Below are positions 4,428-48,116 of a DNA stretch of 64,000 bases, piece by piece. The translations under genes and the position numbers were made by a program. Below the pieces are notes generated by a model. That model saw nothing but the letters and a program-made list of their open reading frames with translations. It made no database searches and was not told the origin of the DNA. The number at the start of each line of letters is the position of its first letter. Positions within the stretch are counted from its first letter, which is position 1. This DNA is from Mytilus californianus (lineage: Eukaryota), in the NCBI RefSeq assembly GCF_021869535.1, contig NW_026262700.1, positions 806,001-870,000 on the forward strand, in the 5' to 3' direction.

Positions 4428-4797
4428 TCATTTTCTGTAAACGTTGAAAAAAGAAATGTTCTTTTGTTTATATTCCTTCTCCTTATCTTTACTTCTTTCG
4501 CTTTGTATTTCTGTTTGCATAGTTTTTATTTCTTCGTTTTTCTTTTTGTCTGTTTCTCTGATCTTTTTCAATAAAGCTTCTAGTTTTTCTTTCCATTCAC
4601 GTTCTTCTCTTTCAAGTCTACGTTGAAAATTTTCACTACGTTCCGATTTTACTCTTTCTATCTCTTTAAATTTTATTTCATTTTTTTCTTTTTCAGATTT
4701 TCTTCTCTTCAGCATATTGTCTATACGATATTTTTGTGAAATATTTTCATCTTTGATTTCTTTATCTTTTCGAAGTGATCTTCTTAGGGAAGTCTCT
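4428..4797 (-). CDS. RING/coiled-coil gene 1, coding exon 3 (18-residue repeat coiled coil, to stop)
   Basis: Acceptor ttattttag|A at 4797. Phase 2 joins ...KF-AG|A-ETSLRRS... into ORF MLKRRKSEKEK...; stop at 4428. Confidence 0.75.
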
Positions 4798-5036
4798 CTA
4801 AAATAATAAAAAAATGAATAAAAATTTTAAAATACGAACATTTATAATTCATATCGTTTATATTGTATTGAACTATAATAAGATTTGTTTGTACAGCAGT
4901 TATTCTCTTGCTCGTATGATATCTTTTCAGTTCGCACATTTCTCATGTGAAAAGTGTCAGCTATTACTATTACAATTGCTATTGCTTTGGACTAATATGT
5001 CGGTGTTGGCTAAACTGAAACAATATCTTTGCATAC

Positions 5037-5657
5037 CTGAACTTTTCTTTGGTTAAATCTAGACTTTTAACTCTTCGTTTATTGTTTTCTATTTCTTTAA
5101 GTTTCCTTATCTCCACTTCCTTGATTCTATGAAGCATGCGCATGTCTTCCTCTTCAATGTGGCGTTTTAAATTCATAAAACGACGCTTGACATGTTCTCC
5201 TTTTTTCAACTTTTGCCATTCATCTTCTATGATACGTTTGTATATTTTTTCGAGCTTAGCATGACTTTGTAAATCGAGTTTCTGAATATTTTGGGACAGG
5301 GCGGTGTTTTGTTTCGTGATTGAATGTTCAGTTTTTCGTGACCGTTCACTTTGCCGAGATCGATTCGTATCCATTCCCAGACTACGATATGCATCTCTTC
5401 TATTTCTTTCCACATATACAGTATGCAAATGTGTTTCCAAGTTCGCCAGCGGCCCAGTCCAAAAACATTTTTTCCATTCACATCGTACAATTTTCTGGTT
5501 TATACGATCTTCTAACTCGACATTCTCACGGTAAAGTCCATCCACTCGGCACATTGGACAGGAACCATGAGAAGCTTGGTAACTCCATCTTGTTATGCAG
5601 AAATGACAAAACTGGTGACCATTTTGACACTCATGGGGCTGCCGTAAGATGTGACAA
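5037..5657 (-). CDS. RING/coiled-coil gene 1, coding exon 2 (rest of RING-HC, TRAF/SIAH-like zinc finger, coiled coil)
   Basis: Acceptor ttcttgtag|T at 5657, donor cag|gtatgc at 5037. Encodes CHILRQPHECQNGHQFCHFCITRWSYQASHGSCPMC and VRCEWKKCFWTGPLANLETHL. Confidence 0.85.
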
Positions 5658-6427
5658 CTACAAGAATTATCATCTATATTAATAACACATTACGCTACGT
5701 TGAAATATATATTATTTTCCTCTTTTATTGCAGATCAATACATAATTTTATACTTTTTACTACATTTGACGCATGTATTATTTCTCATAGGGAATACATT
5801 ATTATTAACACGTTTGATTACAATTGGACCAGTGGTTCCATTTCAAAATATGACAATGTATGTAAGTTTAATGATGACAATGGACACCCAGTGATGCAAA
5901 TAGCTCACGATACCTTTCCGATGAACTAAGCTTGCAAACGATGCTTATATGTGAAAATGTGTTTTTTCGGTATAGAAATATATATTCTTTAAAAAAATAA
6001 TTTAGTTTGTCAACAGACTTATCTCCTATGTAAGCACATGGTTGAACAGTTGAACGGATTGGATGTTGCGGTATTTATGTTCAATAGTTGCAAAGAAAAT
6101 ATTGTGATATCTTGAAGCGCGATATAGACGTGGTCATAACGGGCTACAGTAAGCTAAACGGTATGAGTTTTTTTTTCTCGTTGTTGAAGGCCATACGGTG
6201 ACCCATATTTGCTCATACCCACGTTTTTTAACTCCCGTGGATAGTTGGCTCATTAGCATTCATAGCACATCTCCATTTTTTTCATATATAGATAGGCAGA
6301 ATTTTCTTTCTAAATCGCTTTACTCCTATCGATATAACCAAACAAATATTTTACAACTTAGAGTAAAAAATGGCATCTAATTTTAAATTCTAAACAATTA
6401 GAAAAATAAATTAATGGCATTACAAAC

Positions 6428-6507
6428 CATATTGAACACGTGAACTCTTCCTTCTCCTCTTCTGTAAGGTTGAAAAATAAATTCTCCCTATAGCCAACCG
6501 ATGCCAT
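6428..6507 (-). CDS. RING/coiled-coil gene 1, coding exon 1 (spliced product about 356 aa, putative E3 ubiquitin ligase)
   Basis: ATG at 6507, MASVGYRENLFFNLTEEEKEEFTCSI-TG|gtttgt. Splicing to 5657 completes C-x2-C-x9-C-x3-H-x2-C-x2-C-x12-C-x2-C (C3HC4). Confidence 0.85.
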
Positions 6508-6859
6508 AATTGTTTGACTACACGGTACTCGAAATCTTTGTCAGCATTTCTATAATTTTCCCAGGTGTATTTTGTTCGATCTGTCTAATTATGTTTGTCA
6601 ATATTTACACAAGTAATAATTAGCGTTAAAACATGAAATTCAAAAGAGTAATTGATAAGTTAAAGATTGATTTTCAAATTTTCATTTCAATGAAAACAAT
6701 AGCAAACGTAATTATCAATAATTATTGATGTTTTAAAAGTTTGGGAAGTGAGACAATGATTAAATCCTTGTCGCTTTTTAACTGTAGTCTTGTTCTTCAA
6801 TTACCGTTGTTTAAAAAGGTGTATACTCACATCTAAGTGCAATTTAGTTAAAAAATATA

Positions 6860-7420
6860 GATTCCACCACTGCAACAGGTCACCCGTGTGTTTTGATATT
6901 TCTCCACTCGAGACAATTGAATTTTAATGTTTAAAGCGCGAGGCTTGCCGAGCTTTTTAAATAATTAAAATTTGGCTGTTGTAAGTGGGGAAATATTGTA
7001 ATACACGAGTTATAGTGGGGGAATCTGTTTCTCTAAAGATTTTTATCATTCTTTTTTAAAGATTTACAGAAAGTTGTGGTAGTGTTCTTTATATATGTGA
7101 CGTCAACAAGCACGGTCACCTTTTTTCATGACGTCAAAATCGGAAAATCAGAAGAAACCAGAAAATTTGACACCATAATTAAATTTCGACCAATCATTTG
7201 CCGAGAACAGATATTTCACTAGTGAGAAGAACATTTTTTTTCACAATCGGTTGGGCAATGTGAAAATAGTAAAAAAGAGATAGAAAAAAAAAAACGATCT
7301 CGCAGCGCACCTGTTTTTTGATATGCTTTATTGGTGCGAAAAATCAGAAAAAAAGGGTGCAATGCGAGATCGGGTTTGAGTAGATATGAAAAATCCGCAT
7401 ATTCATAGTATTTGTTCATT
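6860..7420. repeat. Probable interspersed repeat with an internal hairpin
   Basis: Imperfect inverted arms around GCGAGGCTTGCCGAGC (about 6946-6962). The core is the near reverse complement of CTCGGCGAGCCTCGC at about 62841. Confidence 0.4.
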
Positions 7421-7671
7421 ATGTTTTATAACTGATATTTCGAATTCTCCCGGTCGTTAATTAACCCCCCTGCTCTCAACGTTCGGAATGTACAAATACA
7501 CAACAACTTCTGATCAGAATAGGGTCGTTAAATACGATTATTATTCTCATCTATAAACTATTACCGTTGGATTGAACTAGTTTTTCATAATTGTGAGTAC
7601 TCTGAGATCGGTTAGGTATGTTCTATATAGTTGTGTGTATCTGGTACCGATCTTAGGGGTCTATATAAAGA

Positions 7672-8130
7672 TAAGGAGATGTGATACGATTGCCAATGAG
7701 ACAACTACATGTATCCACCAAGGTTCAAATGAAGTGGACGTAAGTAATTATAGGCAATCAAACGGCCTTCAACAACGAGAAAAAATCCAGACCGTACGGT
7801 CGGCTTTAAACGGCCCCGACAAGAAAAATATGAAACAATTCAATTGAGAAAAATAACGGCCTAATTTATAACAAAACGATTTAAGAAAAAACAAAAATGA
7901 CAGACATGAACCAACTACAACCATTGAACTACATGCTTCCGACTTGGGACAGGCCCATACATAATGTGACGGGGTTGTACAGGTTTGTAAGAGCTCAACC
8001 CTCCAATAGCCTGGGACAGTGATATATAACAGTACAGCATAAGAACAAATTATAAAAAAATTATTTGAAAAGGATTGACTTATCAGATGGAAACAAGTAG
8101 AAATGCATCTAACAAAAACACACAGTTGAC
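7672..8130 (+). repeat. Interspersed SINE-like repeat (same family as 1960-2308)
   Basis: AAGGAGATGTGATACGATTGCCAATGAGACAAC...ACGGCCTTCAACAA...GACTTGGGACAGGC. Confidence 0.7.
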
Positions 8131-8812: not shown

Positions 8813-9388
8813 GTGACATGTAGTTGTTTACATCTCTCTCTCCAGACTTTGGAGAAAATTTATCTCATTTGCAGTCATAACATATCTCCTTATTTTCGTT
8901 TTGGAAAAAAAATGTTAAAAGTCAGGTTACCAGATTTTAAACATGAGCACACATGTATATCGCGTTTCAAATACTATTGAAACCTAATTGTTTATTACAT
9001 ATTATATATTACTAAATTAATTGCCATTTTTGAAATTGACGTTTTGTGGAGCTGTTTTGCAACGTTTCCGTAGATTTTATTTTTCCTCTGGATATTTAAT
9101 CTGCTGATAGAAAATGAGACCGTTTTGTGTTTATTTTGATATATTTATCTATGTTCAAAGATGTGCATAATTGCAAATTTAAAGAATACAAATGATTAAG
9201 GCGGGGAATTACGATAGAGCTGATATAAAAATATAAGAAACTTTTACATCTTTCGTTTTTATTAAAGTATTGATATATAATAAGTTGATTAGAATCAGAT
9301 ATTAGAATTTCGTTCAAGTATTAAATAACCATAATATTGAATTTGCTTTTGATATATGATGTTTTCCGTTTATACATTTAATGTCTGC

Positions 9389-10697
9389 TCAACGAATAAA
9401 GGTTGACGATTTATCAGATATATTGCCCATTAGTTTTTTGAAAGCGTCCTTGATTCTCTGTTGTTCTCGTTCTTTTGCTTCCAATTCAAATTTCAGTAAA
9501 GTCTTTGCTTTCTGTGACATTTCGGCTTCAACTTCCGGTTCCGGCTCTTTGTCGCTGATATTTTGTTTGAGTTCCTTTTTCTTCTCTCTGATATCTTGTA
9601 TCGCATCAATCATTTTATCCGTTGCCAATTCTTTCTTACTAGACATATTTCTTATTCTTTTCCACATATTTTCGTCTTCTTTCAACTTTTCCTCGTGCAA
9701 AACCCGTTGTTTTCTGAAAAATGCTAGCTTATCTTTTTCGGCTTTTAATTTAACATCGGCAATGTTTTCATGCATGTCTGATCCTAAGCCACCTTTTGAT
9801 GTTGATACGTTTGATATTCGTGATTTTAAGTTTGATATATATTCTTGTTTCCATTTTTCATCGTTTTGTCTGTGCAAAGAAAATATTTTTCTCCTTCTTT
9901 CGATTTCTTGCTTAAATTTTTCATTTCGCTGACGAAGCATCTCTCTCTGTTTAATTTTCTCACGTTCAAGGTTATTTATTCGTTCTGCAAGGAATACTGC
10001 ATCCTGTTCAAATTGGCGCTCTACACTGCGAAAGTGATGCAACGAATTTTCAAGTTTTTGTTGTCTGTTTCTGTCAATTATGTGCATGGCATGTTCTGCA
10101 TTGACGCTTGCTATGGTTTTCTGTCGTTCAAGTTCATGGACACGTTTTTCCATTGCTTCGACTTGTTCTTTATTTTTCTCTTCTCTAAATTTATTTTCTT
10201 TTTTTATTGCATTTAATTTCCTAATTGCGGATTCCATTAGCTGCTTTTCTCTCTCAAGAGCTTCATTTCGTTCCTTTTCCCTCGCTCTATGTGTACGCGT
10301 TTGAACATTCTGAATCCTTGTTGAAAGAAATTTCATTCTTTCGGCCATATCTTTCTCCATTTTCCTTATTTTCCTACTCGCTGCTTCATTACTATCTCTT
10401 TTTCTTTTTTCTAATTGGTTAATCCTCAAAGACAGAGAACTTGTATTATGTTGCTTATATCTTTCCAATCTTTTTGCACGATCTGCTAATAACTTTTTAT
10501 CTCTTTCCTCCCGTCTGGTTTTCTCAAAAGTACGATTTTTGTCTTTCCGAAATTCCTCGTCCTTTTTAATAAAATCATCAATAAGGACCAATAATGCTAA
10601 CCTATTCTTTGTTCCTATTTGCTTCCATTGTCTCTCATTTTCATGCAAAGATCGCTGTAAAAACATCGATTGTGCTTTCTTGCTTTGATGGCAAAGC
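9389..10697 (-). CDS. Large coiled-coil exon CC-A (K/E/R-rich, 18-residue repeats)
   Basis: 451-codon open frame in the ORF track; acceptor tttccctttTAG|G at 10697 (phase 2); first in-exon ATG at 10666. 18-aa register: LRINQLEKRKRDSNEAAS/RKIRKMEKDMAERMKFLS/TRIQNVQ. Confidence 0.75.
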
Positions 10698-12909
10698 CTA
10701 AAAGGGAAATATTTGATTAGATATATATATGTTGTGTATATCACTGTTTAGTTTCGACAACATTTATAACATGGAGGACAATGCTTAATGTTAGCTTGAA
10801 GTATATAAATTTGTGAGTAAAAAATCAAACTGGATAATTACTGAAAATAAACTTGAATCACCTGGTGAAAGAAGGTGTGCGTCAAAATACTGATATCTGG
10901 TACAAAAACCCTGTACAAATTATAATTTGTACGCAGTTACAACTTGTACATAACATATACATTGTTTATTTGAAAATGTTGTCTTTAGTTCGCTCATATT
11001 TATATTAACTTATATGAATAGTTACGTAAACAACATATATTCTGAACTTACATTTTATAGAATAAAAACAGTATCAACTACCAATCTATCTTAACTCACG
11101 TGCTCGTATATATGAGGACAACAAAATCGGAAATATATATTTAATTAGATTTTATGAACTACCATTATTTACTCAATGTCCAGCGGCAGATGTTTCATTG
11201 AATTTCAGAACGATATTTAAGTATCAATAAATTCAAAAGATAAGTAATAAATTGAATGTCCCTCTGGTATCTTTCGTCCCTCTTTTATAAAAAAAGAAGA
11301 CCGACTTTTCCATACATTTTTACCATATATAATGATAATAATTATGTTTTCACATGACAATTGTCGTTTTATGCGCATAAGATGGGATTATTTAACATTC
11401 TTAAAAATATCGTACAAAACACTCGGTAAAAACTTTAACCAAAAATGAAATGATTCAAATTGCAGACAGTTGCATTTTTAAAGCAGGAAAAATTAGATAA
11501 CACAACTTAACGATAAAGACAAAAAGTTAAAAAAAATCTAGTAAAACTTACCCTAATCTTAAAGATCTACTAAGTATGTAAATGACAGTCCGTGTGATTG
11601 TTTATTAATTTTAAGGTGTACAAAACACGTTTGTAATTATATTTTGTCCTTTTGTCGTAACTCAGGTCTTTTGTATATTATATTTGTTGTTTTTAAATTG
11701 AATATGTTAATGAGAAATTAAAAAAATCAAAGAACGTATTGTTTTCAAATCAAATATCTTAATAAGAATAAGAACAGTTGATTCAAATAAGCATCTGTAT
11801 CAAACCGATATTTTATCTTAAAATTTTTAATTATTCATGTCGCTATTTGTACCACCTGCCATGTTTGTTTTGTTTGTTGCTGAAATCAATAGGTATGATT
11901 TTACGTCTTAGTTTACTCTCTTTAGAAAACTTTGTTTTAAAGTCATCAATTTAGCGGAATATGTTACAGATCATATTTGAATGCTTGAAAGGGTGAAAAC
12001 TATATACTCCTGGGAACCTAGTTTGTTTTGAAACATTAGTATTCAAATAAAATCTTAATTTACCTATCTTATTCAGTTGAGCAATTTTATGATTTTTTAA
12101 ATGTCAGTTTTATCAAAGAAATTGATACAAAGTTAAATTTTAGTAGTTCTACAATTTTGTACTTGTATAAGAAAAACACATAGTACGAAAATGATTAAGT
12201 AGTAAAAAAAATATATATTTAATATTAAAAAAAGATGTGGTATGATTGGCAATGAGAAAACTCTTCACAAGACCAAATGATACCGAAATTAACAATTTAA
12301 GTTGATCGTAAGGCATTCAACAATTAGCAAAGCTTATACGGCATAGTCGGCTATAAAAGGCCCCGGAATACGAAACGTAAAACAATTCAAACGAGAAAAT
12401 AATATACAAAATTAACGAACAACAAATATGTAAGACAGCAACAAACGACAACCACTGAATTGCAGGCTCCTCATATGGGACATGCACATACATGTACATA
12501 CACAATGTTATATATAGCTACAAAAAATATTACAGTTTATCCCATTTCTTGATATTTTGAAAACTCATATTGTACATATTACGAAATATGTGAATGATGA
12601 TTTCTTTTGTGAAGAAAAATATTTATCAAATTGTTTACATTTTCAATTTGACAATAGTTCATCACCATAAATAAAGTGATCTATACTAATATTCTGTAGT
12701 AAAACAAAACTCTTACAAACGAAATTATCATAATTATTTCCCTTGATGTGATTTAATTGAGTATATGCGTTTGTAAATGTAGTTATTCACTTAAATCAGT
12801 AAAGTATGCGATAAATTGAGCTTCTTCTCGTTTTGTTACTTACAATGTGTTCAATTTACACGTTTCTCTATCATTATGTAAGAATAAATGTTAAATCATT
12901 ACACATTAT

Positions 12910-12965
12910 ATGTTAATATATTTGCTGGTTTCTATATGTGTATTCGTAATGTATACATATATAAA
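12910..12965 (+). promoter_or_regulatory. Putative type-3 Pol III promoter of ncRNA-1 (PSE-like motif plus TATA)
   Basis: ATGTTAATATA at 12910 (about -79) and TATATAAA at 12958-12965 (about -31) relative to the stem start at 12989; same spacing at the two paralogues. Confidence 0.6.
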
Positions 12966-12988
12966 CATATCCAAAGCATGTTTCAATT

Positions 12989-13261
12989 GGAGATTGAAAG
13001 AACTGTGTCTACAGAGCGGTTACTTGGATGTGTTGGTGTTTAACAAAACGTTTAGCAAAACGTTTATTACACTACGATACACATGTGTACTGAAATTGAA
13101 AGGCGACAAGGCAACTTTCAACATTAAGCAGAGAAATACATATATGTCTCCGATCAAAGGTACATTGCAACTACAAGCAGACGTATGCTACAGTTATAAG
13201 ACAGTGAATGCCAAAGCTTCGCAAGGTCATACTGAGACACGGTGATTTCAAATCTTCTTTT
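12989..13261 (+). ncRNA. Putative structured ncRNA-1 (about 270 nt), unidentified family
   Basis: 5' arm GGAGATTGAAAGAACTGTGTCT (12989-13010) pairs with 3' arm AGACACGGTGATTTCAAATCTTC (13235-13257), including G-U pairs; TTTT at 13258-13261; internal hairpins such as TTGAAAG 13096 / CTTTCAA 13115. Confidence 0.65.
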
Positions 13262-13879
13262 ATTTCGGGAAAAAAACGTGATGAAATTTAAACAAATGTA
13301 TATAGTTCTATACATTTAACCATACAGTTATATGACATTCTTATACAATACTAGTTGATCCTTTATGTAGTTACTGTTGTTTTGTATAATAAAAAAGGCA
13401 ACTTATGCCCAACTATATTTTCAAACTCTATTTCTCCGTCCAAACATGTTTCGAAACGATAGTATGTTTTATACACTACATGTACGTTAACGGATATCAT
13501 TTCTGTTTATTTATTTTATATATGAATGTCATTGCGGAAATGAAAACACACATTACTATTTTCGATTGCGAGATGTTATAAGTACTACAACTGTTCTATA
13601 TATGGATTGATACGTATCAATAGAGATGACAAGGATATTGTGTATAATGACGAACTAACTAACGAAAGCTTAATATGACGAATTGTACGAAACGGGAGCT
13701 GCTAATGAATACATTGGACACACAAACTCTGATTTAAATTTAGTAATTTTCATCGTTTGCATGTAGTTTAAAGAAGATAATACCTATATCTATATATGAT
13801 TCCTCACATAAATAGTTCAATGTTTTCCACAATAGCAAATGATGCACTTGATATCCCAGACTTTTTTTGACAATATATT

Positions 13880-14165
13880 CATAAAAAGTGAAATAACAAA
13901 AATACCGAACTCCAAGGCAATTTCTAAACGAAAATTCAAAAGGCAAATGACAAAAAAATCAAAAGCTCAAACACATCAAATGAATAACAACTGTCATATT
14001 CTTGACTTCTTACCGGCTTTTCATATTAAGAAAATGGTGGATTAAACCTGGTTTTATAACTAGCTATACCTCTCACTTCTATGACAGCAATTTAAAAATC
14101 CATATTATTCACAACGATGTTTGAACAAAAACAAACAGACATGATAGGTAAAAATGTCAAAATTA
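13880..14165 (-). repeat. Interspersed repeat family B, reverse orientation
   Basis: Reverse complement of the ...AGAGGTTTAGCTAGCTATAAAACCAGGTT...AAGAAAATG... element at about 17960-18200, 24545-24810 and 34200-34565. Confidence 0.65.
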
Positions 14166-14609
14166 TAAGATTGATGATCAATGCATACATAACTTAACGA
14201 AATTGTGGAAACTTTTAAAAAGTTAGGAAAAATCTAATTATGATTTGGTCTATTTCTTTTAGGAGTAGGAAACATCTGAGTTTCTCTTAGTTATTCTGCG
14301 TCCCTACCTTGAGGAAGGCAAATAAATTCAAAAGACATGAAATGTTCAACCCTAACCCTACCCAATCATCAAATCGTCTAAATGATCAATCATATTATTT
14401 GCTTTCCGAGTGTTTTAAGAAATCAATGCTATTGTAAATACATTTACTAATTATTTAAGATTTTATCAAACAAACCATGCCAGAAGAAGCATGTTGCGGT
14501 CCATAAATATTTCCTAAAGGAACGGGTCATTAGAGTTAATAAATTTGAATCCTATTCAGTATGGCTAGAGGTATAGGGGGATGGTTTATATCTCAAAAAC
14601 ATGTTTAAC

Positions 14610-14897
14610 CCCCGCCGCATATTTGCACCTGTACCAAGTCAGGAGCCTCTGGCTTTTGTCAGTCTTGTATGATTTTTAATTTTAGTTTTTGTGAATAATT
14701 CAGAGTTTAGTATGTCGTCCATTATCACTGAACTAATATACATATTATGTGTTTAGGGGCCAGCTGATGGACGCCTCCGGGTGCGGGAGTTTCTATCGCT
14801 TCATTGAAGACCCATTAGTTGCCTTTGGCTGTTGTGTGCTCTATGGTCGGATTGTTGTCTCTTCGACACATTCCCCATGTCCATTCTCAATTTTATT
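14610..14897 (-). repeat. Interspersed repeat, reverse copy of the 2758-3040 element
   Basis: Ends ...GACACATTCCCCATGTCCATTCTCAATTTTAT, the near reverse complement of ATAAAATTGAAAATGGAAATAGGGAATGTGTC at 2758; partial copy at about 30680-30777. Confidence 0.7.
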
Positions 14898-16216
14898 AAT
14901 CATTGCATCTCTTCTCTTAATATCCAAACTTAAAAATGTTGTTCTAGTAATGGATATAAAAATAAGGGGTTGTAAGTCTAACAGATTTTACTCAAAACAA
15001 TGTACGGCATAAGTAGTGGTGATACATATACTTAGTGGTATAAACATAGAAAATCCAATATTCTAATACATAATGATAATCTAAAAATAATTATAAAAAA
15101 GGAAAAAAAGGCTGGTGTACCCGACAAGCGCATGTGGTCTTTTTGACATGAATATTTTTTCTTTTAAATAGTAGAACGTCTTTATACAAAACCAGTTATG
15201 CATTTTGTCTAGGAAACTTCAATAACAAAATTATTCATTCACTCTTATGACCAGGCTTTTACACTAAAATAGTTGCCAAGATTAGAAGTTGACAGATATG
15301 ATAAAGAACTATTTGCAACAGAAATCATTTTTTATTTGAAACAAAACCTTTTTGATTCTTTTTTTTTCTTTTTTAAACGGAGATATTTGTTTGTCTGAAT
15401 CTTGAATACCTAAATGAAAATACAGAGCAAGCATACGATCCAACAAGAATAAAGTTATAAATTATTTCTGCATTCATATTTGATTGAACATTGCACAATT
15501 CATCGATGCACTCGAATATTCATATAAGTGATGTACATTTTATTTGAAATCAACAGTTGCAAACAACAACATTCTATCGTAAGAAAAGTAACACGTTCTG
15601 AAACTTTTAAACGTCTTATTTTATGCTGTCCACTCAGATATACCCTTTAACTCATTTATTGTCGTATAGATATCTATTGTCATTTTATTGTCCATGTCAA
15701 TCATGGATAATAAATACAATACAATACAGTTGTTACCTGAGAGGGAGTATCTCAAAGATTATCTCAATTCAAAATATTTTTACACCTTTTGCAGGATCAT
15801 AAAATAAATGCCAATACAAATCCAAATGGTATTTTGTCTTATTGAAACACAATATGCATTCAACTTTTATGCATGCCAGGCCTCAAAACTTTTTAAACTG
15901 CACAAGTTAGTATGTACACAGAGTAGATTTTCAGCACTTTTTGTCCATTTGTTATGATGAACCTCTAATTCGTTCGTCAATATCGTGGTGATCTCTACTA
16001 TAAGAAAGCTCCATTTGAAATGAACTGTATTGATTGACATGTACAATAGAGAAACTAAACATACCTGACAATAATTGGTGATTTTTTAAACAGTGTCATT
16101 AAGCAGAACATATCAAGTGAAACTCAACTGTTTGGAAATTTAATCATCTTTTGAGATCAAAAACAAAGTGCAGTGCAAAATCCCAAATACTCCAGTGGAC
16201 TACGTTTGTTTCGAAC

Positions 16217-16585
16217 ACTATTACCCGAGTTAAAATCTTAAATTATCTACAATGTACTGTCTCCGCTAATTATCTAAATAACGTGTTATAGTGATCTTTC
16301 AATTCTCGTTGTAAATTGTTGCTTTTATTGTTTAATCCATTTTGGTGGTGTCATTTGACGTGGCTCTGTACTTATACATTCCGTCATTGTGTTATTATAC
16401 TATTACCCGAGTTAAAATCTTAAATTATCTACAATGTACTGTCTCCGCTAATTATCTAAATAACGTGTTATAGTGATCTTTCAATTCTCGTTGTAAATTG
16501 TTGCTTTTATTGTTTAATCCATTTTGGTGGTGTCATTTGACGTGGCTCTGTACTTATACATTCCGTCATTGTGTTATTATACTAT
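16217..16585. repeat. Apparently perfect tandem duplication of a 182-bp unit
   Basis: ACTATTACCCGAGTT...GTGTTATTAT at 16217-16398 and again at 16399-16580. Confidence 0.95.
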
Positions 16586-16717
16586 GGTATATTTGTGTAT
16601 TCTTGTCTTTCGTTTTTGCTATTGTGTTTTGCTTATATGCCTTTATTTTTGAAAATATTGGTTTATTTTTATAGTGATTACAATTATGACACTGTTTTGA
16701 CTGCTGTACCCCTTATA

Positions 16718-19523: not shown

Positions 19524-19546
19524 CATTTCCATCGCTGAAGTTAAGT

Positions 19547-26210: not shown

Positions 26211-28568
26211 TTATGCTACTGATATGTCTGTACTGCTAGTCTTCATCATTTTATCTATCCTTCGTTGTACCTCTGATATTCTTTGATCCACTAGAAACAT
26301 GCTGGGATAACTATTTACAGAGAGATTTGTTCTTGGTTTTATTGGAACAGTTAGTTTTTGTCTCCTTTCACGACGGTCTTCTATGGTGGAACGCTTAACA
26401 TTCTCCATTTCGTTATTTTGCAACGTAACTCTCGTTATTTGTTCTACAGTGGTTGTTTTTGGATCCTCTTTTGTGTTAGGATTCCGAAAACCTTCTTCTA
26501 CTTCAGCCGATTTACCAAAGCGATGTTCTGTTTTGGTGTCATTTTCAAGTTCTTTTATTCTAGTCTTTAGTGACACTTTTGTATTGACTGCCCCTGTTCC
26601 CATCTCCGGTGGTTTAACCTGAGTTTTGTCTACAAGAAGTACATTTTTAGTAGTGGGGAGGTTCGGTACATAATCATTCGTTGTCTTTTTATCTGTTTTC
26701 TCCTTGTTTTTACTCTCGGTTTCATCGTCTCCCGTTCGTTTCGGCTTTTTAACTGTAGAAAATAGAAACTCGTAACGTTCTTTCTGATCGTTACTCTTTA
26801 AAATTTGCCCTTCTTTCATTTTTGAACATTGATTGTTAAATTTTGCATTTTCCTCGTTATATTTGTCACTCTTCGGTTCTATACCTGTCGTTAGTGATTG
26901 TTTGCTCTCTGTAAACTTGTTTTCGAAATGGACAGTTTTATTTGTTATACTATCTTTCGCGATTGAGAGAGGCTTAATACCCATAATTTCCTCAACTTCC
27001 GGTTGTCTGAGTTCAAGACTTTTTGGAATCAGCGGGTCAGATAATGTGATAATTTGTTTCCTCTCTTGTAAACGGTTTAGTGAGTTGAAATTACCAGTAG
27101 GTGTTTGAGTTAAATTTGGTTTAATTTGTCCAGGTTTTGATGTGTCCGTTCGACGTGAATTGTTTGTACGGACGGCATGATTGTACATTTGAATTGGGTT
27201 TTCGTTTAATTTCGTTGGTTTTTCTGCAATATCCTCTATTTTTGTTGCTTCTGATTTCTGTTCAAATTCTACTTTGGGATTCTTCGTTTGTTTCATAGAA
27301 GTATTTTGATCGGAATGATTGTTTATTCTGTTATCTTTACGGAGATTGTTGGTATTATTACTACTTTTTTGTCTTTGCGTTTCTGTGTTTTGTTGTGTTT
27401 TACCAAATTCCGCTTTGTTTGTAACGCTATCGACTTTGTTGAGATGAAAAGTTGTACTGACGTCCGTATCGGTTTTTCTAAAGGTGTTTAGGGTTGTTTG
27501 TTTTACTGCATAATTATTCTTTTGTGGAACATAAAAACGTTGAAACCGTTCTGAGTTGGAACGTCGCACTATATCTGTCTGTGACGTAAATTGTTCTGAT
27601 TTTACAACGGGTTTAGTAATACGTTGTTTTTTTGCGCCTATTCTAGGTGTAATTTTCTTTTTGCCTACGTCAAGTAAAATAGGATCTTCTTCGTTTACAG
27701 TGGACAAAATCGTCTTGACAACGCGATTATTTATTGCCTTTTTGTTCATGTTTTTATGCAATTGATCTTTTCCACTAAGATATGTCTTGTTTTCCCATTC
27801 TACCTCAACCTTTCGTTGAGATTTATAAACTTTATTGCCCTCTCCTTGTTTTGACTTTTCAAGCGACTGTTTTTTCTTCTCAACTGTCTTTCGTCCAATT
27901 TCCCAAAGCTTTTTACCAGATACTTTCTTCCCACTTTCAATTCGTCTTGCGGCCAGAAGTTTGTGTTGCCAAATCATACGCTCCTGTACAATCTTCTTCT
28001 CAATGTATGATATTCTGCGTTCAGCTTTTACAATATCTTTATTTCTTTCCTGTTCAGCGGTTGTAACTCTGCGCATAAACAGCTTCCGGTCCTCCGCGTG
28101 TTTCTTTTCTATTGTTTTAATTCGTTTTTTCGTCTCCTCTTTTGACTTTTCCGCTCTTTTTTCGATATTCTCTATATTTTTGGCAATTATCTTTGATTCC
28201 TTTTTAATGTGTTCTTCCATCTGTCTTGTGCTCCTATTAGAAAGAGAAGAACTCAGTCTTTTCCTTTCCTCAATTTTTCGTTCTCTTAACTTCAATTTTT
28301 TCTTGTTTGATATTTTCTCTTTTTCGATATTTTGAACATACATTTCCATCAGTTCTTCGTCTTTTTTCATTCTCTCCTTCTCTTGCTCTTTCCAAGCTTT
28401 TTCTTTTCTTTCAGCAATTTCTCTTTTATGTAGTTCCTCTTGTCTGATATTCCAGGCTATACAAGCTTGGAAAATTTGTCGTTCCTTCTCTGTCTGTTTT
28501 TTGCGCTCTTCAATTTTCTTACGGTACAAAATGTCAACAGCATTACCCATGGCAGCTTTTCTATCCAC
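26211..28568 (-). CDS. Large coiled-coil plus low-complexity exon CC-B (first ATG at 28550, 779 aa)
   Basis: 785-codon open frame; probable acceptor ttttcgacag| at 28619. N-terminal 18-aa repeats (KNIENIE.../KRIKTIE.../RRVTTAE.../RRISYIE...ERMIW), then a T/N/K-rich disordered tail. Confidence 0.8.
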   Translation of the reverse strand: MDRKAAMGNAVDILYRKKIEERKKQTEKERQIFQACIAWNIRQEELHKREIAERKEKAWKEQEKERMKKDEELMEMYVQNIEKEKISNKKKLKLRERKIEERKRLSSSLSNRSTRQMEEHIKKESKIIAKNIENIEKRAEKSKEETKKRIKTIEKKHAEDRKLFMRRVTTAEQERNKDIVKAERRISYIEKKIVQERMIWQHKLLAARRIESGKKVSGKKLWEIGRKTVEKKKQSLEKSKQGEGNKVYKSQRKVEVEWENKTYLSGKDQLHKNMNKKAINNRVVKTILSTVNEEDPILLDVGKKKITPRIGAKKQRITKPVVKSEQFTSQTDIVRRSNSERFQRFYVPQKNNYAVKQTTLNTFRKTDTDVSTTFHLNKVDSVTNKAEFGKTQQNTETQRQKSSNNTNNLRKDNRINNHSDQNTSMKQTKNPKVEFEQKSEATKIEDIAEKPTKLNENPIQMYNHAVRTNNSRRTDTSKPGQIKPNLTQTPTGNFNSLNRLQERKQIITLSDPLIPKSLELRQPEVEEIMGIKPLSIAKDSITNKTVHFENKFTESKQSLTTGIEPKSDKYNEENAKFNNQCSKMKEGQILKSNDQKERYEFLFSTVKKPKRTGDDETESKNKEKTDKKTTNDYVPNLPTTKNVLLVDKTQVKPPEMGTGAVNTKVSLKTRIKELENDTKTEHRFGKSAEVEEGFRNPNTKEDPKTTTVEQITRVTLQNNEMENVKRSTIEDRRERRQKLTVPIKPRTNLSVNSYPSMFLVDQRISEVQRRIDKMMKTSSTDISVA

Positions 28569-37088: not shown

Positions 37089-38022
37089 TTGCCTAACAAT
37101 GTAATTTTAACACACTATTTAGTATGTAAATATAAGAATGTTTAAAATATTTACAAAATGATGAAAATAAACGCAATATTTCGCTAGACTAACTAGCTTT
37201 ATCAAGCGTGCATCTATCAAGGTGAAATCGGATGTAGATGATAAGAAACTTTTGCAGCTCAATGTATATGTTGCACTTGAATTTAGCTGCCTTGAAAATA
37301 ATACATAATTTGGATGAAGTTCAAGATTTTTACAAAATTGGTAGTTGAAGTTAGCAACGTCCATTGGCCAATATTACAGGATAAAAAGGACGATGCTGTG
37401 TACTAAATTATTCTTTATCTTTCCTGTATCTTTTCTCATCTTTTTCGTTAAGACCATCAGGTTCTAAAGTGTGGAGTTGGTGGATCCAAAAATTTTCTCT
37501 TCTCCTTCTCGCCGTGGTGTCCCACTCGGTATTGACTTCTATGATTTGGAAGGTAACATTATCAAAAGAATGTTTCGTTGAACGAAGATGTCTTGTGAGA
37601 GGACAGTTTTTGTTGGTTTTGTACCATGAACGATGGTTATTGAGCCGAATATTAAATTTGTCCATTGTTTCTCCCACATACTGAATGCCACATGTGTCAC
37701 ATGTTAATATATAAATTGAGTTCTCCGTTTTACAGTTGGAATTTGAGTAGATGGTATAATTTTGTTTAGTAACGGAGCTGATGAAAGAACTGCTTGTATT
37801 GGCAGCTTTACAACACAAGCAGTTCCTTCGACCACATTGTTTGTAGCAACCGGGAGATGGAGTAGGCTGCTTTGCTAATACAGATGATCTAAATACAGCT
37901 TGATAAAGCTAGTTAGTCTAGCGAAATATTGCGTTTATTTTCATCATTTTGTAAATATTTTAAACATTCTTATATTTACATACTAAATAGTGTGTTAAAA
38001 TTACATTGTTAGGCAATCTATA
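37082..38022 (-). mobile_element. 5'-truncated Penelope-like retroelement with an inverted copy of its 3' terminus
   Basis: 37082-37206 and 37899-38022 are about 125-bp inverted repeats enclosing a GIY-YIG frame; the left end abuts (TA)n. Confidence 0.85.
37408..37897 (-). CDS. GIY-YIG endonuclease domain with upstream Cys-rich linker (Penelope-like ORF C-terminus, no RT)
   Basis: PGCYKQCGRRNCLCC...NSIYILTCDTCGIQYVGET...RLNNHRS...RRRRENFWIHQLHTLEPDGLN. Confidence 0.9.
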
Positions 38023-38109: not shown

Positions 38110-38156
<47 letters not shown>

Positions 38157-41483: not shown

Positions 41484-42350
41484 TTACCTATCAGACCTCG
41501 TTTTTGGTATTTTAGGAAGCGTTAAGGCACGTGGTGTGATTCGATTACTAACATTTTCCATGACTCTTGCTTGGTCCTTCACGTTCTTAACGATGTTCTG
41601 ATTATGTAATACTTCTTGGTCACGTGATTGTTCAAATGTATCTGTTGTTCTGGGTTCGCCGTCTAAGGGCTGGACAGACCTCTTGAAAACTTCCTTCTTT
41701 AATCCTTCTATCTTTTGAACATGTAAAAGCCAAGCTTTTCTTTCGTTATATTTGCGTTTTTCAATTTCTTGAAAACGTTTTTGTGACGCTTCGAACTCCT
41801 CTTCTCTTTTGTGTTCCAATTCTTGCATGCGATGAAGAAATGCTTCCTGTTCTTGTTGTTTCCTCTCTTCAAGGTGACTTACTCTGGTTTTTAATTTTTC
41901 AACGTTCTTCTGTTTTTGTTTCTCGATTTCAAGAATTCTTTGTTGTAAAGCATCATTTTCTATTTGGAATTCTTTATCCTTTCTCTGAAGCATTCGACAA
42001 AAAGCAAAATTGTTCGCTCTTCGTCTCTTTTCAAATTCAACCATTCTCCTTTTAAGCATTAGATTATCAGTCTTTTTCTTTTTCTCTATTTTTCTTATTT
42101 GTGTTTGAATTTCTTCCCTATAAGTTTGTTCTAGTTCCCTTTCGTCATTTTTTCTTGTCAACTTCCGTTCCAATAGCCTCTGCCACTGAATTTCTTCCAT
42201 TCGGATATGGGACGTGATTGGTTCAAGATTACGTATTGTCCCCACTATCCGACTTTTTTGTTGTTCAAATGGTTCATGCTTCCAAGTGTAAGGTAATATT
42301 CTACTATCAGTGTCAGTGTTTTCTTGGTCATCATTTTTTGCGCGAATCAT
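41484..42350 (-). CDS. Coiled-coil ORF CC-C (288 aa, eight consecutive 18-residue repeats)
   Basis: QIRKIE.../RMVEFE.../MLQRKD.../RILEIE.../RVSHLE.../RMQELE.../RFQEIE...ERKAW/HVQKIE recur at 18-aa spacing. Confidence 0.8.
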   Translation of the reverse strand: MIRAKNDDQENTDTDSRILPYTWKHEPFEQQKSRIVGTIRNLEPITSHIRMEEIQWQRLLERKLTRKNDERELEQTYREEIQTQIRKIEKKKKTDNLMLKRRMVEFEKRRRANNFAFCRMLQRKDKEFQIENDALQQRILEIEKQKQKNVEKLKTRVSHLEERKQQEQEAFLHRMQELEHKREEEFEASQKRFQEIEKRKYNERKAWLLHVQKIEGLKKEVFKRSVQPLDGEPRTTDTFEQSRDQEVLHNQNIVKNVKDQARVMENVSNRITPRALTLPKIPKTRSDR

Positions 42351-42884
42351 TTCCTTTGCCTTAGTAAGCTTATTTTTGTATGTTAGCTACGTTCATCGCG
42401 CGGGTCTTTCTCTTGTTCGTGAACAGCTGGTATTGCAGAGCTACTGTATACTGATTCCTTTCTGTATTGGTTGTTCTTCTCGTTTATGTTTTCCTTAATT
42501 TCTTCGTCTTTGACGTTCTTATTTTCGTCTTGTCTTCCCGCCACTTGATGAGCTCCTTTTGCAGAGCCACTATATACAAAATCGTTTCTTTCTCGATTAA
42601 TCTTTTCATTTACATTTTCTTTCAATGCCTCGTCTTTTTTTATCGGTATTTTCGTCTTTTCGTACTGCCTGTTGGTGTCCAAATTCTTGCTCATCAATAA
42701 TCGCGCTTATTGAATTGATAGCATTCATTTGTTCTGTAGTAACGTCTCGTAAATTCATTGAACTAACTTTCTTATCACGTGCTTCTTCTTTCTTTCCATT
42801 TACCACGTTTCTTGTTTCACTTTGATCGCTAATTTTGTTTACATAATGACTTTCATATTATTCGGTTAAAATAATGTGTATTCT
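42351..42884 (-). pseudogene. Frame-disrupted 5' part of the CC-C exon
   Basis: Acceptor ttttttccag| at 42884 and in-frame TAA at 42858. ORFs 42606-42806 and 42383-42697 join if the A7 run (plus-strand T7 at 42635-42641) were A6; the joined frame has an internal repeat (HQ..VR.DEN...DE..KEN.NEK.N...VYS.SA) twice. Confidence 0.55.
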
Positions 42885-45137: not shown

Positions 45138-45447
45138 TTACGGTTTGATGGTACTTTTCATATTATGAGGGGTCATTTTATCATTTTTCATTTTGACCTT
45201 GATCACACTTATATGTCTCTGCCATGTTGCGTGTCCATCTTTGTTTTTCTTTTCTTTTTCTGAAAGTTTCCTTTGAAAAGCATCTTTTTCCTCCCTCATT
45301 TTTCTCTCTATTTGCAAAATTCTTTGTTCAGAGTTATATCTATTTTCCTGTTGTTTTTGTTCAATGTCTTGTATTTTTCTGTATAAACTGTGCCTTTCTG
45401 CAACTTTTCGACTTTCGATTTGTTCCAGTTTTTTTCGTGTTATTTCC
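45138..45447 (-). CDS. RING/coiled-coil gene 2, coding exon 3 (18-residue repeats, to stop)
   Basis: Acceptor gtatttcag|G at 45447 (phase 2); EITRKKLEQIESRKVAERHSLYRKIQDIE...TWQRHISVIK...TIKP*. Missed by the ORF track because it has no start codon. Confidence 0.75.
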
Positions 45448-46324
45448 CTGAAATACGTAATATAAGGTATTTAAAGTATTAGTAACTGTTTTATCTTTAT
45501 GTATAGGAGTATACACAATTTGAATACTTTTTTCCCAAGTCTTCTCGAAATGGGGTGTTAAATCGGAGGATTCGTGTTGTGAGAGTGTCACCTTGCTAGA
45601 CGTTAAGGGACCTCAGTGGCCTAGTGGTCTAAGTCGTTCATATCCTTAAACCATAGCCTGTCAACATTACATATATCGAGTCAATTACCAATCCTCCATT
45701 GTGTGATACCTAATCACTTGATATAACTAAACAACGCAATTTATAAGACTAACACATCGCTTGTCACATGTGAAGCAGGATCTGAAGTGGGGTTGCTCAG
45801 TCTTTAGTTTTCTATGTTGTGTTTTGCAGAGTGCTTTTTGTCTTTTGGTAGTTTTTCGTTTTTTTGCTATGGCTTTGTTAATATAAAAAAGAAGATGTGG
45901 TATGATTGCCAATGATACAACTCTCCACAAGAGACCAAATGACACAGCAATTAACAACTATAGGTCACCGTACGGCCTTCAACAATGAGCAAAGCCCATA
46001 CCGCATGTAAGTTTATCTTCGAATTATGAGTTTGAATATCCCTTTATTATCTCATGCCTCTCTTTTAATTAACCGATTCATTGTTTTATTTTTTCGATTC
46101 CTAAATAAACAAGAAATATTTGTCCCTGAACGTTATGCACGAAACTTGCAATCGCAATCGTCTAAGAAAATTAATATACCAATGATCAATAGTTCTTCAA
46201 AGGAATAGCATTTGATCATATACTTTTGTAAGATCGCCGTATGATTTAATGTTGCTTTTCATACACGTTTTTATCAAATCATAAACTATAATACGATGAA
46301 GTAACCATGGTAAATAAATCTGAC

Positions 46325-46927
46325 CTTTTTTTCTGCTTGACATTTTCAATATCTTCCAGTTTTTGATAGAAGTTCCCTCTGTTAGTATGTGCTTGTTGCA
46401 ATGCAATCGCAGGCAATTTGTCCGTTTTCCTGTCGGTTATATCCGTAAGTGGTCGGTAATAGTCGGAACGAGAAGTGTTTGATTCTAAAGGAGGTAACGT
46501 CTGTGCGCTTTGCCTATCTAACACATTTTGTCTCTTAATCTTTTCCATCTTTTTTATCCGACGTTGGACAACCTCCTTTTTCAAATGGTGTATTTTGTCA
46601 ACCTCCTTAGCTACTTTGTGATATTCTATTCGGTCGTCAGTTGATAACGTGTCTCTCTCGGTACTAACGCTGGATTCTGACGAATGGTGAGAATCGGCAA
46701 CATGATGTTTAAGCCTTTCAAGTCTACCTTTCCATGCACACATAGAAGACTCGCATCGTACATATTTGCTCTCTATTTTATTTCTCAAATCAGTATTATC
46801 ACTGTACGTAGCCTGTGCTCCACAGGTAGGGCACGTTTTGTTCCCCCGTCTAGTCCATTCTTTGACGCATGACAAGCAATATACATGTCCGTTACAACAT
46901 TGTTGGGGTTGATTCAGAATTAATCGA
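46325..46927 (-). CDS. RING/coiled-coil gene 2, coding exon 2
   Basis: Acceptor ttttcag|T at 46927, at the same RING position as gene 1; RLILNQPQQCCNGHVYCLSCVKEW...CPTC and VRCESSMCAWKGRLERLKHH. Donor AG|gtcaga at 46325 is a weaker match. Confidence 0.8.
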
Positions 46928-48021
46928 CTGAAAATAAACAAAATGTATACAAGTTATGCTATTAAAAAAAAACTTCATAGATTTTCATTTAACTTTCCTT
47001 AAAAAAATATTATAAGGCTTAGTTTAATTTTGTGTTGTTGTATTTATTTATATATTAATAAATTATTTTGTGAAAACTTCTTCCAAAATCAAGGAAAATA
47101 GAAAAATAATCACCTTTTTTTGTTTACTCTTTTTTCATTTTTTTTTTTTTTACAATAATGGCATTGATACAAATTCAGAACCACGAATGTCAGTATTTTG
47201 CCAAAATTAACGCATTTCTTCAATTTTTTTTGTATTTTTCTTTCAAAAACAAGTTGATTTATTTGTTATTTGTTTAAGGATGTCCTTCGATACGAAATTT
47301 CAGACAAAAGACATGTAATTTTATAAAAAGTATATTAAATATGTTTTCAACATTACTGTAAAACGCTATTGAACAGTTTCATTTCATGGACATATGCCAA
47401 ATAGTTGACACTCTTTTCAGTGTATTTTAAAGACTCTTTTTAAAATCAAGTCGGTCACACAAACTTGTTTATTCTAACCCTGCAAGTGAAACAAGTAATG
47501 AGTATATTGGCCCTATCTCTTTGTACTGCAATTTTTTATCATTGTAAACTTACTCAAACAAAGCAGATTACAATGGATTCTCTAGATTCGTTTGGATATT
47601 ACATAAAACATTAAACGTATTTGCTTGTCTCGTCCGTTCGTTTTTCGTTGACAGGAGAAGGCTTATATAAAATGAACTAGTACTTAGATATATCTTTAAA
47701 ATTTAACACGCTGTTTAATTAAAAAAAACAACAAAGACACGGAGAGCGCTTTGCAATTTCATAAGTTGTATCAACAGTAAAATAATTCCTCCTACACAAT
47801 CTTGATTTGAACATATTCATGCACTTTAACTATTTCTTTAGAAAAAATTATTAACTTGACTGTGTAAGTATATTTTTCATATGTTATCTCATCTCACCCT
47901 TTTTATGCATGTTAATTCTTATTTGAATTTCTCTTTAATCTTTGTTCCTGCGTGTTTTATGAGAATGAACTATCTATCTATCATATAATTTTGTTTATAT
48001 AAAGTCTAATAATATTCTTAC

Positions 48022-48116
48022 CAAATAGAACACGTATATTCTAGTCTTTCTCTTTTAGAGAGGTCCAGGAATATTTCATTATCATGTCCGCCTACGTCAA
48101 CCAGTGTTTCATCCAT
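48022..48116 (-). CDS. RING/coiled-coil gene 2, coding exon 1 (spliced product about 335 aa)
   Basis: ATG at 48116; MDETLVDVGGHDNEIFLDLSKRERLEYTCSI-TG|gtaaga; paralogous to exon 6428-6507. Confidence 0.85.

What the first reader, a model, noticed from the sequence alone, without database searches (positions are those of the whole stretch)
4428..48116. Five-locus minus-strand family built on an 18-residue coiled-coil repeat, two members fused to a RING-HC and zinc finger
Seen: RING gene 1, CC-A, CC-B, CC-C and RING gene 2 all contain runs of the unit R/K-[IVMF]-x-x-[IL]-E-(x9)-[FLW]-x-x at 18-aa spacing. CC-B, CC-C and RING gene 2 exon 3 place a Trp at the same register (ERMIW, ERKAW, GHATW). 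The two RING genes share intron positions and phases. Established: 18 residues is five alpha-helical turns (7+11 periodicity), which gives a nearly unsupercoiled helix bundle, and C3HC4 RINGs are usually E3 ligases. Inference: a lineage-specific, rapidly diverging tandem family of filament or scaffold proteins, some with ligase heads. I recognise no named family.
Basis: partly seen in the sequence, partly recalled or inferred. Interest (0 to 1): 0.7.

Follow-up and report, generated by a model that had tools for sequence, protein, structure and literature searches.

The report
Mussel RING and 18-residue-repeat rod family
Five neighbouring mussel genes, at least three of them expressed or annotated, encode long helical rods built from an exact 18-residue repeat that carries a known three-strand "trimerisation" motif, and two also carry a TRAF-type ubiquitin-ligase head; the family is real, conserved and so far found only in mussels, but its function is untested.

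Summary
The window is Mytilus californianus. All five minus-strand loci share an 18-residue unit: R, hydrophobic, x, x, hydrophobic, E, K, x, K, then a hydrophobic residue at position 16. Hydrophobic periodicity peaks at 3.60 residues per turn, with essentially no power at 3.5. The two RING genes have the same two phase-2 introns, and the register runs unbroken across the second one.

New here:
- The unit is anchored on the published R-hxxhE parallel-trimer motif.
- The RING plus zinc-finger head matches TRAF2/5/6 RING-ZnF1 by sequence and by fold, but there is no MATH domain. NCBI's name "TRAF3-like" therefore fits the head only.
- AlphaFold2 models the repeat as one unbroken helix: 187 residues in CC-C and 109 in RING gene 2.
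- The family is not rapidly diverging between species. dN/dS is 0.03-0.18 in the rods and 0.35-0.87 in the disordered flanks.
- A profile search of 1.84 billion proteins found only orthologues of these five genes. Gene order is kept in M. edulis, M. trossulus and a more distant source.
- CC-C in this window has lost its start codon and has three frameshifts.

Most likely these are nearly untwisted parallel three-stranded rods, some with ligase heads. Function is untested.

The parts
4428..4797 (-). RING gene 1, exon 3. It holds the tail of the 18-residue array and the stop codon at 4428-4430.
   Evidence: Acceptor tag|A at 4797, read. The joint 4797->5037 appears in transcript contigs of three runs. 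Repeat units are in register with exon 2.
5037..5657 (-). RING gene 1, exon 2. It holds the rest of the C3HC4 RING, one TRAF/Sina-type zinc finger, a linker and the first 18-residue units.
   Evidence: Sequence read. Sina_ZnF match, sub-threshold. Joints 4797->5037 and 5657->6428, with GT..AG on the minus strand. Periodicity 3.60, p=0.003.
6428..6507 (-). RING gene 1, coding exon 1. It runs from the Met to C-S-I-(TG), which is the first Cys pair of the RING split by a phase-2 intron.
   Evidence: The joint to 5657 appears in contigs and in 2 raw RNA reads.
9389..10666 (-). CC-A, an intronless CDS of 425 aa with about 11 units of 18 residues in two register blocks.
   Evidence: ORF. Orthologues of 419-425 aa in M. 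edulis, M. galloprovincialis and M. coruscus. Unspliced transcript contigs over 9321-10419, which is as far as the laid stretch reached. Periodicity 3.60 with power 12.6.
26211..28550 (-). CC-B, an intronless CDS of 779 aa. The 18-residue array lies within residues 53-215 of an N-terminal helical region, followed by a disordered tail of about 560 residues rich in Lys, Asn, Ser and Thr.
   Evidence: ORF. Orthologues of 769-770 aa with the same start. BLASTP to CC-C 2e-8. dN/dS 0.18 for residues 1-215 and 0.41 for the tail.
41484..42833 (-). CC-C, a damaged copy. The start codon is ATT, and there are frameshifts near 42634, 42376 and 41505. The 288-aa ORF at 41484-42350 still holds all ten units.
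   Evidence: Aligned to the intact 497-aa copy on contig C24 (L002, P0001). Units listed. AlphaFold2 of P0001 gives one helix at 202-388 with pLDDT 94-98.
45138..45447 (-). RING gene 2, exon 3. It holds five 18-residue units, including the Trp unit, and the stop codon.
   Evidence: Mapping of the NCBI model P0008. Register 6, 24, 42, 60. Part of the modelled helix 215-323.
46325..46927 (-). RING gene 2, exon 2. It holds the rest of the RING, the TRAF-type zinc finger (C90, C95, H106/107, H112/113), a helix, a disordered linker and the first unit of the tail array.
   Evidence: TRAF2 3knv at 4.7e-7. Foldseek match to TRAF6/TRAF5 RING-ZnF1 with TM 0.71-0.75.
48022..48116 (-). RING gene 2, coding exon 1. 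It runs from the Met to C-S-I-(TG), with the same phase-2 split as RING gene 1.
   Evidence: P0008 is 100% identical to the window.

Best explanation
This is a five-gene tandem family, so far found only in mytilid mussels. Each member contains a long, uninterrupted alpha-helical rod of about 90-190 residues.

The rod is made of 18-residue units, which read as 7+7+4 residues, or five helical turns. Each unit begins with a canonical heptad R(g)-h(a)-x-x-h(d)-E(e)-K, which is the published R-hxxhE parallel-trimer motif. Next comes a heptad whose core positions are mostly Lys and Glu. A four-residue stutter with one hydrophobic residue at position 16 closes the unit.

[quoted passage not shown] The most likely assembly is a nearly untwisted, parallel, three-stranded coiled coil.

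Two members carry a TRAF-type C3HC4 RING plus one TRAF/Sina-type zinc finger at the N-terminus of such a rod. They would act as oligomerisation-dependent E3 ubiquitin ligases, resembling a TRAF without its receptor-binding MATH domain. The three head-less members pair the same rod with long disordered tails. All five repeat the same R/h/h/E knuckle at the same spacing, so they could form mixed rods with the ligases, as scaffolds, adaptors or regulators.

Shown here: the genes, splicing and expression of RING1, expression of CC-A, the periodicity, the motif, the fold of the head, conservation and restriction to mussels. Inferred: helix continuity (AlphaFold2 monomer), trimeric state, ligase activity and co-assembly.
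For: - Periodicity is exactly 3.60, with no heptad signal, and it is conserved in distant orthologues.
- Consensus from 46 units: position 1 basic in 70%, position 2 hydrophobic in 80%, position 5 hydrophobic in 70%, position 6 acidic in 78%, position 16 hydrophobic in 63%. Pro plus Gly make up 1.1%.
- The strict motif R[ILVM]xx[LIV]E occurs 11 times against about 0.8 expected from shuffles. Its definition and its parallel-trimer specificity come from PMC3653964 and PMC5940361. Ile is the commonest residue at both a and d.
- The meaning of 18/5 is taken from PMC4786415.
- AlphaFold2 gives single helices at 202-388 (pLDDT 94-98) and 215-323 (block means 79-93 up to residue 320), with disordered flanks.
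- The head matches TRAF2 at 4.7e-7 and TRAF6 at 8e-6 by sequence. Foldseek matches TRAF6/5/2 RING-ZnF1 at E about 1e-6, TM 0.71-0.75.
- RING ligands and the Trp and Pro of the RING are invariant.
- Purifying selection: dN/dS 0.03-0.18.
- RING1 is spliced and, like CC-A, expressed.
- Gene order is conserved in three other sources.
- The family profile hits only these loci in the 1.65-Gb genome, and only their orthologues among 1.84 billion proteins.
Against: - No oligomer was modelled or measured.
- Only 3 of the 5 geometric core positions per unit are hydrophobic, and position 9 is mostly Lys. The seam is therefore weak, and the rods could be metastable or need a partner.
- CC-B is less regular, at 3.64-3.65.
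- The rod shows no detectable similarity to TRAF coiled coils or to any solved chain.
- Ligase activity and co-assembly are inferred. Tissue and condition of expression are unknown, and one deep RNA run had almost no reads.
Confidence: 0.6

Rival explanations
1. The family and its periodicity are real, but the rods form two-stranded, four-stranded or antiparallel bundles rather than parallel trimers. The R-hxxhE match would then be incidental to ordinary g-e' salt bridging.
For: [quoted passage not shown] The seam is narrow and partly polar. TRAF-type RING-ZnF1 modules and the RAG1 N-terminal domain are themselves dimerisation units (entry titles).
Against: There are 11 strict motifs against 0.8 expected, with Ile favoured at both a and d. 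Basic residues at position 1 and acidic residues at position 6 would face like charges in an in-register antiparallel pairing (inference).
Confidence: 0.22
2. The rods are not self-associating coiled coils. They are basic amphipathic or largely single alpha-helices that lie along a periodic acidic partner such as a nucleic acid, a cytoskeletal filament or a membrane, with one hydrophobic patch every 18 residues, about 2.7 nm.
For: Net positive charge, with K+R 0.29 against E+D 0.18, and only 25% hydrophobic residues. The stripe is straight at 3.60. The AlphaFold2 monomer is a very confident lone helix. By my own arithmetic, 18 x 0.15 nm is close to the roughly 2.75 nm rise per actin subunit, and 54 residues is close to the 8 nm tubulin dimer.
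Against: The conserved R and E flanking the hydrophobic pair form the classic interhelical g/e arrangement. No partner is known. There is no 36- or 54-residue super-repeat beyond the decay of the 18-residue signal in CC-C. The TRAF-type heads fit an oligomerising stalk.
Confidence: 0.12
3. The resemblance among the five loci is low-complexity chance similarity of Glu/Lys/Arg-rich sequence, not common descent.
For: HMMER with CC-C alone did not retrieve CC-A or CC-B in the genome. The wide profile search also picked up unrelated bacterial repeat proteins with R-V-x-x-L-E motifs.
Against: - A composition-adjusted, nearly gapless CC-B/CC-C alignment at 2e-8, ending in the same Trp unit and IE-G-KK.
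- Five-way in-register alignment.
- Shared intron positions and phases in the RING genes.
- Adjacency and conserved gene order.
- Shuffles that keep composition do not reproduce the register.
Confidence: 0.03

Closest known systems
TRAF proteins (TRAF2/5/6 RING-ZnF1 module plus trimeric coiled coil)
   Same: A C3HC4 RING is followed directly by a C-x4-C-x11-H-x4/5-H zinc finger with the C.W.G.L..L..H signature. These are the best sequence and fold matches. The head sits on a coiled coil that is probably parallel and trimeric. NCBI names RING gene 2 'TRAF3-like'.
   Different: There is one zinc finger rather than several. There is no TRAF-C/MATH domain in the protein or downstream. The coiled coil has an 18/5 repeat and no detectable similarity to TRAF-N. 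Head-less paralogues lie in the same cluster.
Coiled coils carrying the R-hxxhE trimerisation motif (coronin-1, ccbeta, L1ORF1p; Kammerer et al. 2005 as cited in PMC3653964 and PMC5940361)
   Same: The same Arg(g)-h(a)-x-x-h(d)-Glu(e) motif is present, with Ile/Leu/Val/Met at the core positions.
   Different: Known examples have one to four motifs in heptad coiled coils. Here the motif recurs once per 18-residue unit along rods of up to ten units. The oligomeric state is not measured.
Non-heptad coiled coils with 18/5 periodicity (7+7+4; Hartmann et al. 2016, PMC4786415)
   Same: Hydrophobic periodicity is 3.60, that is, a stutter delocalised over two heptads.
   Different: In the literature read here this periodicity is described as a local feature. 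In this family it is a true sequence repeat kept for 90-190 residues. An unrelated protein from the wide search (P0043) also has a strong 18-residue period, so the principle is not unique.
TRIM/RBCC ligases
   Same: The layout is RING, then a zinc finger, then a coiled coil.
   Different: The zinc finger is TRAF/Sina-type, not a B-box, and no B-box family was matched. TRIM coiled coils are antiparallel dimers (my knowledge).
Trichohyalin / CFAP58 (automatic NCBI names of CC-C and CC-A orthologues)
   Same: The sequence is Glu/Lys/Arg-rich and helical.
   Different: There is no match to any Pfam family, including trichohyalin-plectin-homology-type families. The names reflect composition only.

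Membership tests
TRAF family | N-terminal C3HC4 RING | tested here: met
   Ligands are C29, C32, C42/43, H46, C49, C52, C64 and C67. RING Pfam matches are just below cut-off. Fold matches TRAF6 RING.
TRAF family | TRAF-type zinc finger(s) after the RING | tested here: met
   One finger only. The TRAF2 3knv alignment spans the RING and ZnF1 at 4.7e-7. Foldseek match to TRAF6/5 RING-ZnF1 has TM 0.71-0.75. Pfam Sina_ZnF scores 22 bits, below its 32-bit cut-off, and zf-TRAF was not matched.
TRAF family | C-terminal TRAF-C/MATH domain | tested here: not met
   No MATH match in P0008 at E<=1. The NCBI model and the transcripts end in the rod. No domain was found in ORFs downstream of either RING gene.
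TRIM/RBCC | B-box zinc finger between the RING and the coiled coil | tested here: not met
   No B-box family among the Pfam matches. The finger aligns to TRAF, Sina, RNF125 and LNX fingers.
SIAH/Sina | RING, two zinc fingers and the substrate-binding domain | tested here: not met
   Sina_ZnF and Sina_RING are both below cut-off and there is no further Sina domain. SIAH1 RING-ZnF1 is only rank 21 by fold.
R-hxxhE trimerisation-motif coiled coils | The sequence motif Arg-[ILVM]-x-x-[LIV]-Glu at positions g, a, d and e | tested here: met
   11 strict occurrences against about 0.8 expected, and 21 relaxed occurrences spaced 18 residues apart. Definition read.
R-hxxhE trimerisation-motif coiled coils | Parallel three-stranded assembly | not testable with these tools
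   Only monomer AlphaFold2 was available.
18/5 non-heptad coiled coil | Hydrophobic periodicity of 3.6 rather than 3.5 over a continuous helix | tested here: met
   Peaks at 3.58-3.62 with p<=0.005 and no signal at 3.5. CC-B peaks at 3.64-3.65. Continuous helices in the models. Knobs-into-holes packing was not tested.
Trichohyalin / TPH-domain and CFAP58 (database names) | Match to the family profile | tested here: not met
   No Pfam family for CC-A, CC-B or CC-C or their orthologues at E<=0.1.

The most novel reading that the evidence does not exclude
The five proteins co-assemble through their shared 18-residue R-hxxhE units into straight, mixed three-stranded rods. These rods would set TRAF-type RING-ZnF heads at fixed distances and carry the disordered tails of the head-less members. 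The result would be a mussel-specific ubiquitin-ligase scaffold of a build not described before, perhaps in innate-immune signalling. A natural coiled coil that keeps exact 18/5 periodicity with alternating hydrophobic and Lys/Glu core layers for up to 28 nm would also be a new model system for non-heptad coiled coils.
Probability: 0.15. Interest if true: 0.6.

Novelty: new variant of a known kind. Interest (0 to 1): 0.42.

Why it matters
For coiled-coil structural biology, this is a natural, conserved rod that holds exact 18/5 periodicity over ten repeats. Each repeat pairs a textbook trimerisation motif with a polar-core heptad. That makes it a ready test case for how untwisted bundles with polar cores are stabilised.

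For mussel biology, it defines a small, conserved, lineage-restricted gene cluster. In it, TRAF-type ligase heads have been put on a new stalk in place of the receptor-binding domain, next to head-less paralogues that could regulate them.

It also corrects three misleading automatic names: TRAF3-like, trichohyalin-like and CFAP58-like. The function remains unknown, so the interest is moderate.

Tried and rejected
- Pfam on all ORFs and on orthologues gave no family for the rods.
- The protein atlas gave nothing above chance for CC-C, and only generic RING clusters for the head.
- A profile of the five rods against all solved chains gave nothing below E 0.1.
- A PSSM seeded on CC-C units overfitted CC-C and was dropped in favour of register and Fourier tests. 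The local hmmsearch call failed.
- I looked for MATH or other domains downstream of both RING genes and found none.
- I considered a TRIM reading and rejected it, because there is no B-box.
- I considered that the intronless CC genes with R-hxxhE coiled coils might be retrotransposon ORF1-like. I rejected this on copy number (only two clusters in 1.65 Gb), conserved gene order and purifying selection.
- The look-up of NCBI neighbours of P0008 is withheld for this genome.
- The source organisms of the distant homologues (ENA ERZ21930238, SRR26215658/9) could not be named.
- Literature searches for these genes in Mytilus found nothing.
- The joined, spliced RING gene 1 protein was not sent to any search. 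Its exons were searched and analysed separately by reference, and register continuity across the junction was obtained by counting residues.

Full report
**Source and loci.** Protein searches return 100%-identical NCBI entries from Mytilus californianus. The window is contig C120:806001-870000 of a 1.65-Gb assembly. On the minus strand, 5' to 3', lie:
- RING gene 2 (48116-45138)
- CC-C (42833-41484)
- CC-B (28550-26211)
- CC-A (10666-9389)
- RING gene 1 (6507-4428)

A DNase II exon sits upstream on the plus strand (50454-50744).

**Gene models.**
- RING gene 2 is the NCBI model P0008, 335 aa, named "TNF receptor-associated factor 3-like". It maps to three exons: 48116-48022, 46927-46325 and 45447-45138.
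- RING gene 1 has the same build, with exons at 6507-6428, 5657-5037 and 4797-4428.
- In both genes the first intron splits the second Cys codon of the RING (TG|T). The second splits an Arg codon just before "E-[IT]-[TS]". Both introns are phase 2.
- Transcript contigs from three runs of two studies carry the RING gene 1 joints 4797->5037 and 5657->6428. These read CT..AC on the plus strand, which is GT..AG on the minus strand. Two raw RNA reads show the second joint.
- The same contigs cover CC-A without a splice over 9321-10419, which is as far as the laid stretch reached. RING gene 1 and CC-A are therefore expressed.
- CC-A (425 aa), CC-B (779 aa) and CC-C (497 aa when intact) are intronless in their coding parts. 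Their orthologues have matching lengths.
- I did not send a joined RING gene 1 protein to any search. Its exons were handled by reference.

**The repeat is real.**
- Autocorrelation peaks at lags 18, 36 and 54.
- Fourier analysis of hydrophobic residues peaks at 3.60 residues per turn in CC-A, CC-C, RING gene 1 exon 2 and RING gene 2 exon 3. Power at 3.5 is essentially nil. CC-B peaks at 3.64-3.65.
- In-register motif pairs exceed composition-preserving shuffles by 20- to 70-fold in four of the five genes. CC-B is weaker, at 2 vs 0.4, p=0.054.
- By residue counting, the register continues across the exon 2/3 junction in both RING genes: 177 -> 249 in RING gene 1 and 189 -> 207 in RING gene 2.
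- MAFFT aligns all five rods in register.
- From 46 units the consensus is: position 1 R/K, 2 I/V/L/F/M, 5 I/L, 6 E/D, 7 K/R, 9 K (or I/M), 16 L/F/W. Only 1.1% of residues are Pro or Gly, and the net charge is positive.
- Trp occupies position 16 of the last-but-one unit in CC-B, CC-C and RING gene 2. This points to duplication of whole arrays rather than convergence.

**Common descent.**
- Composition-adjusted BLASTP gives CC-C/CC-B 2e-8 (28% over 179 aa with four gaps), CC-C/CC-A 4e-5, CC-A/CC-B 0.009 and RING1/RING2 2e-8.
- A profile of the five rods hits only these five loci and five counterparts on contig C24 in the whole genome.
- Among 1.84 billion representative proteins, 30 reach E<=0.001. 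About 15 of these are orthologue clusters or fragments of the five genes. The rest are unrelated repeat proteins, mostly tail-fibre-like.
- The order DNase II / RING2 / CC-C / CC-B is kept in M. edulis and M. trossulus. RING2 / CC-C / CC-B is also kept in a more distant unnamed source, where CC-C is 61% and CC-B 37% identical.

**What the unit means.**
- In heptad notation, positions 1-7 read g-a-b-c-d-e-f = R-h-x-x-h-E-K. [quoted passage not shown]
- The strict motif occurs 11 times against about 0.8 expected. Ile is the commonest residue at both a and d. From my own knowledge this also favours trimers.
- Positions 8-14 form a second heptad whose core positions are mostly Lys (9) and Glu/Asp (12).
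- Positions 15-18 are a stutter with a hydrophobic residue at 16.
- 7+7+4 = 18 residues over five turns is the 18/5 periodicity described by Hartmann et al. [quoted passage not shown]
- AlphaFold2 models CC-C as disorder, then one helix at 202-388 (pLDDT 94-98), then disorder. It models RING gene 2 as RING-ZnF, a helix, a disordered linker and one helix at 215-323.

**The head.**
- P0008 matches TRAF2 RING-ZnF1 (3knv, 4.7e-7), RNF125, TRAF6 and RAG1 by sequence.
- Its model matches TRAF6/TRAF5/TRAF2 RING-ZnF1 by Foldseek at E about 1e-6, TM 0.71-0.75. RAG1, RNF125, LNX and SIAH1 follow.
- All eight RING ligands and the four finger ligands are present.
- There is no MATH domain, B-box or Sina substrate-binding domain in the protein or in downstream ORFs.
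- The head is therefore TRAF-type, but the protein is not a TRAF in the strict sense.

**Selection.**
- Between Mytilus species the rods have dN/dS of 0.07-0.08 (CC-C), 0.18 (CC-B) and 0.03-0.14 (RING gene 2 exon 3).
- The RING-ZnF head has 0.06-0.09.
- The disordered flanks have 0.35-0.87.
- "Rapidly diverging" is therefore wrong for orthologues.

**State of the copies.**
- Compared with the intact C24 copy and its orthologues, CC-C in this window has ATT for ATG at 42833. It has net frameshifts near 42634 (in an A-run), 42376 and 41505.
- The ten-unit core ORF survives. This could be real decay or assembly error.
- The two clusters are 83-97% identical in DNA.

**Verdict.** The most likely working is parallel, nearly straight three-stranded rods, with TRAF-like ligase heads on two members and possible mixed assembly with the head-less members. 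The trimeric state, ligase activity and co-assembly are inferred, not shown.

Noticed in passing
G000 contig C24: 52941380-52949583 and 53113570-53123567 (loci L002, L004-L006, L010-L012, L016, L018, L020, L023, L024): There is a second copy of the whole five-gene cluster in the same assembly, 83-97% identical in DNA. The CC-A to CC-B gap there is about 164 kb, against about 15 kb in the window. Defects are reciprocal: the C24 copies of CC-B (one TAA) and CC-A (several stops in its N-terminal part) are interrupted, while CC-C is the broken one in the window. Whether this is a divergent haplotype or a segmental duplication is not resolved.
   Followed up: partly
window 37408-37818 (-): An ORF with a GIY-YIG nuclease domain (Pfam 3.5e-7) lies between CC-C and CC-B. 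It is probably a fragment of a mobile element.
   Followed up: no
window 50454-50744 (+): A DNase II exon (Pfam 2e-8). The same neighbour lies head to head with RING gene 2 in M. edulis and M. trossulus.
   Followed up: partly
window 6820-8019: Transcript-contig word depth is very high here, up to about 3000 at 7820-8019, with many loose ends. This looks like an abundant expressed repeat between RING gene 1 and CC-A.
   Followed up: no
window 12738-23307: Other first-stage notes flag three putative ncRNA cassettes in the interval between CC-A and CC-B. I did not examine them.
   Followed up: no
L007:1456-2409 (G000 C1:69509010 region): Another gene has a RING plus the same type of zinc finger (38% identical over 79 aa). 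It is followed by a Ser/Arg-rich linker and a short C-terminal Arg/Glu-rich helix, with no 18-residue array. It may be the nearest relative of the head outside the cluster.
   Followed up: partly
protein P0043 (from the wide search, source unknown): An unrelated 441-aa protein has an even stronger 18-residue, 3.60 periodicity (power 37.8), built of ...KVDALEKKVDKKFDAMDQ... units. Long 18/5 arrays therefore exist elsewhere.
   Followed up: no
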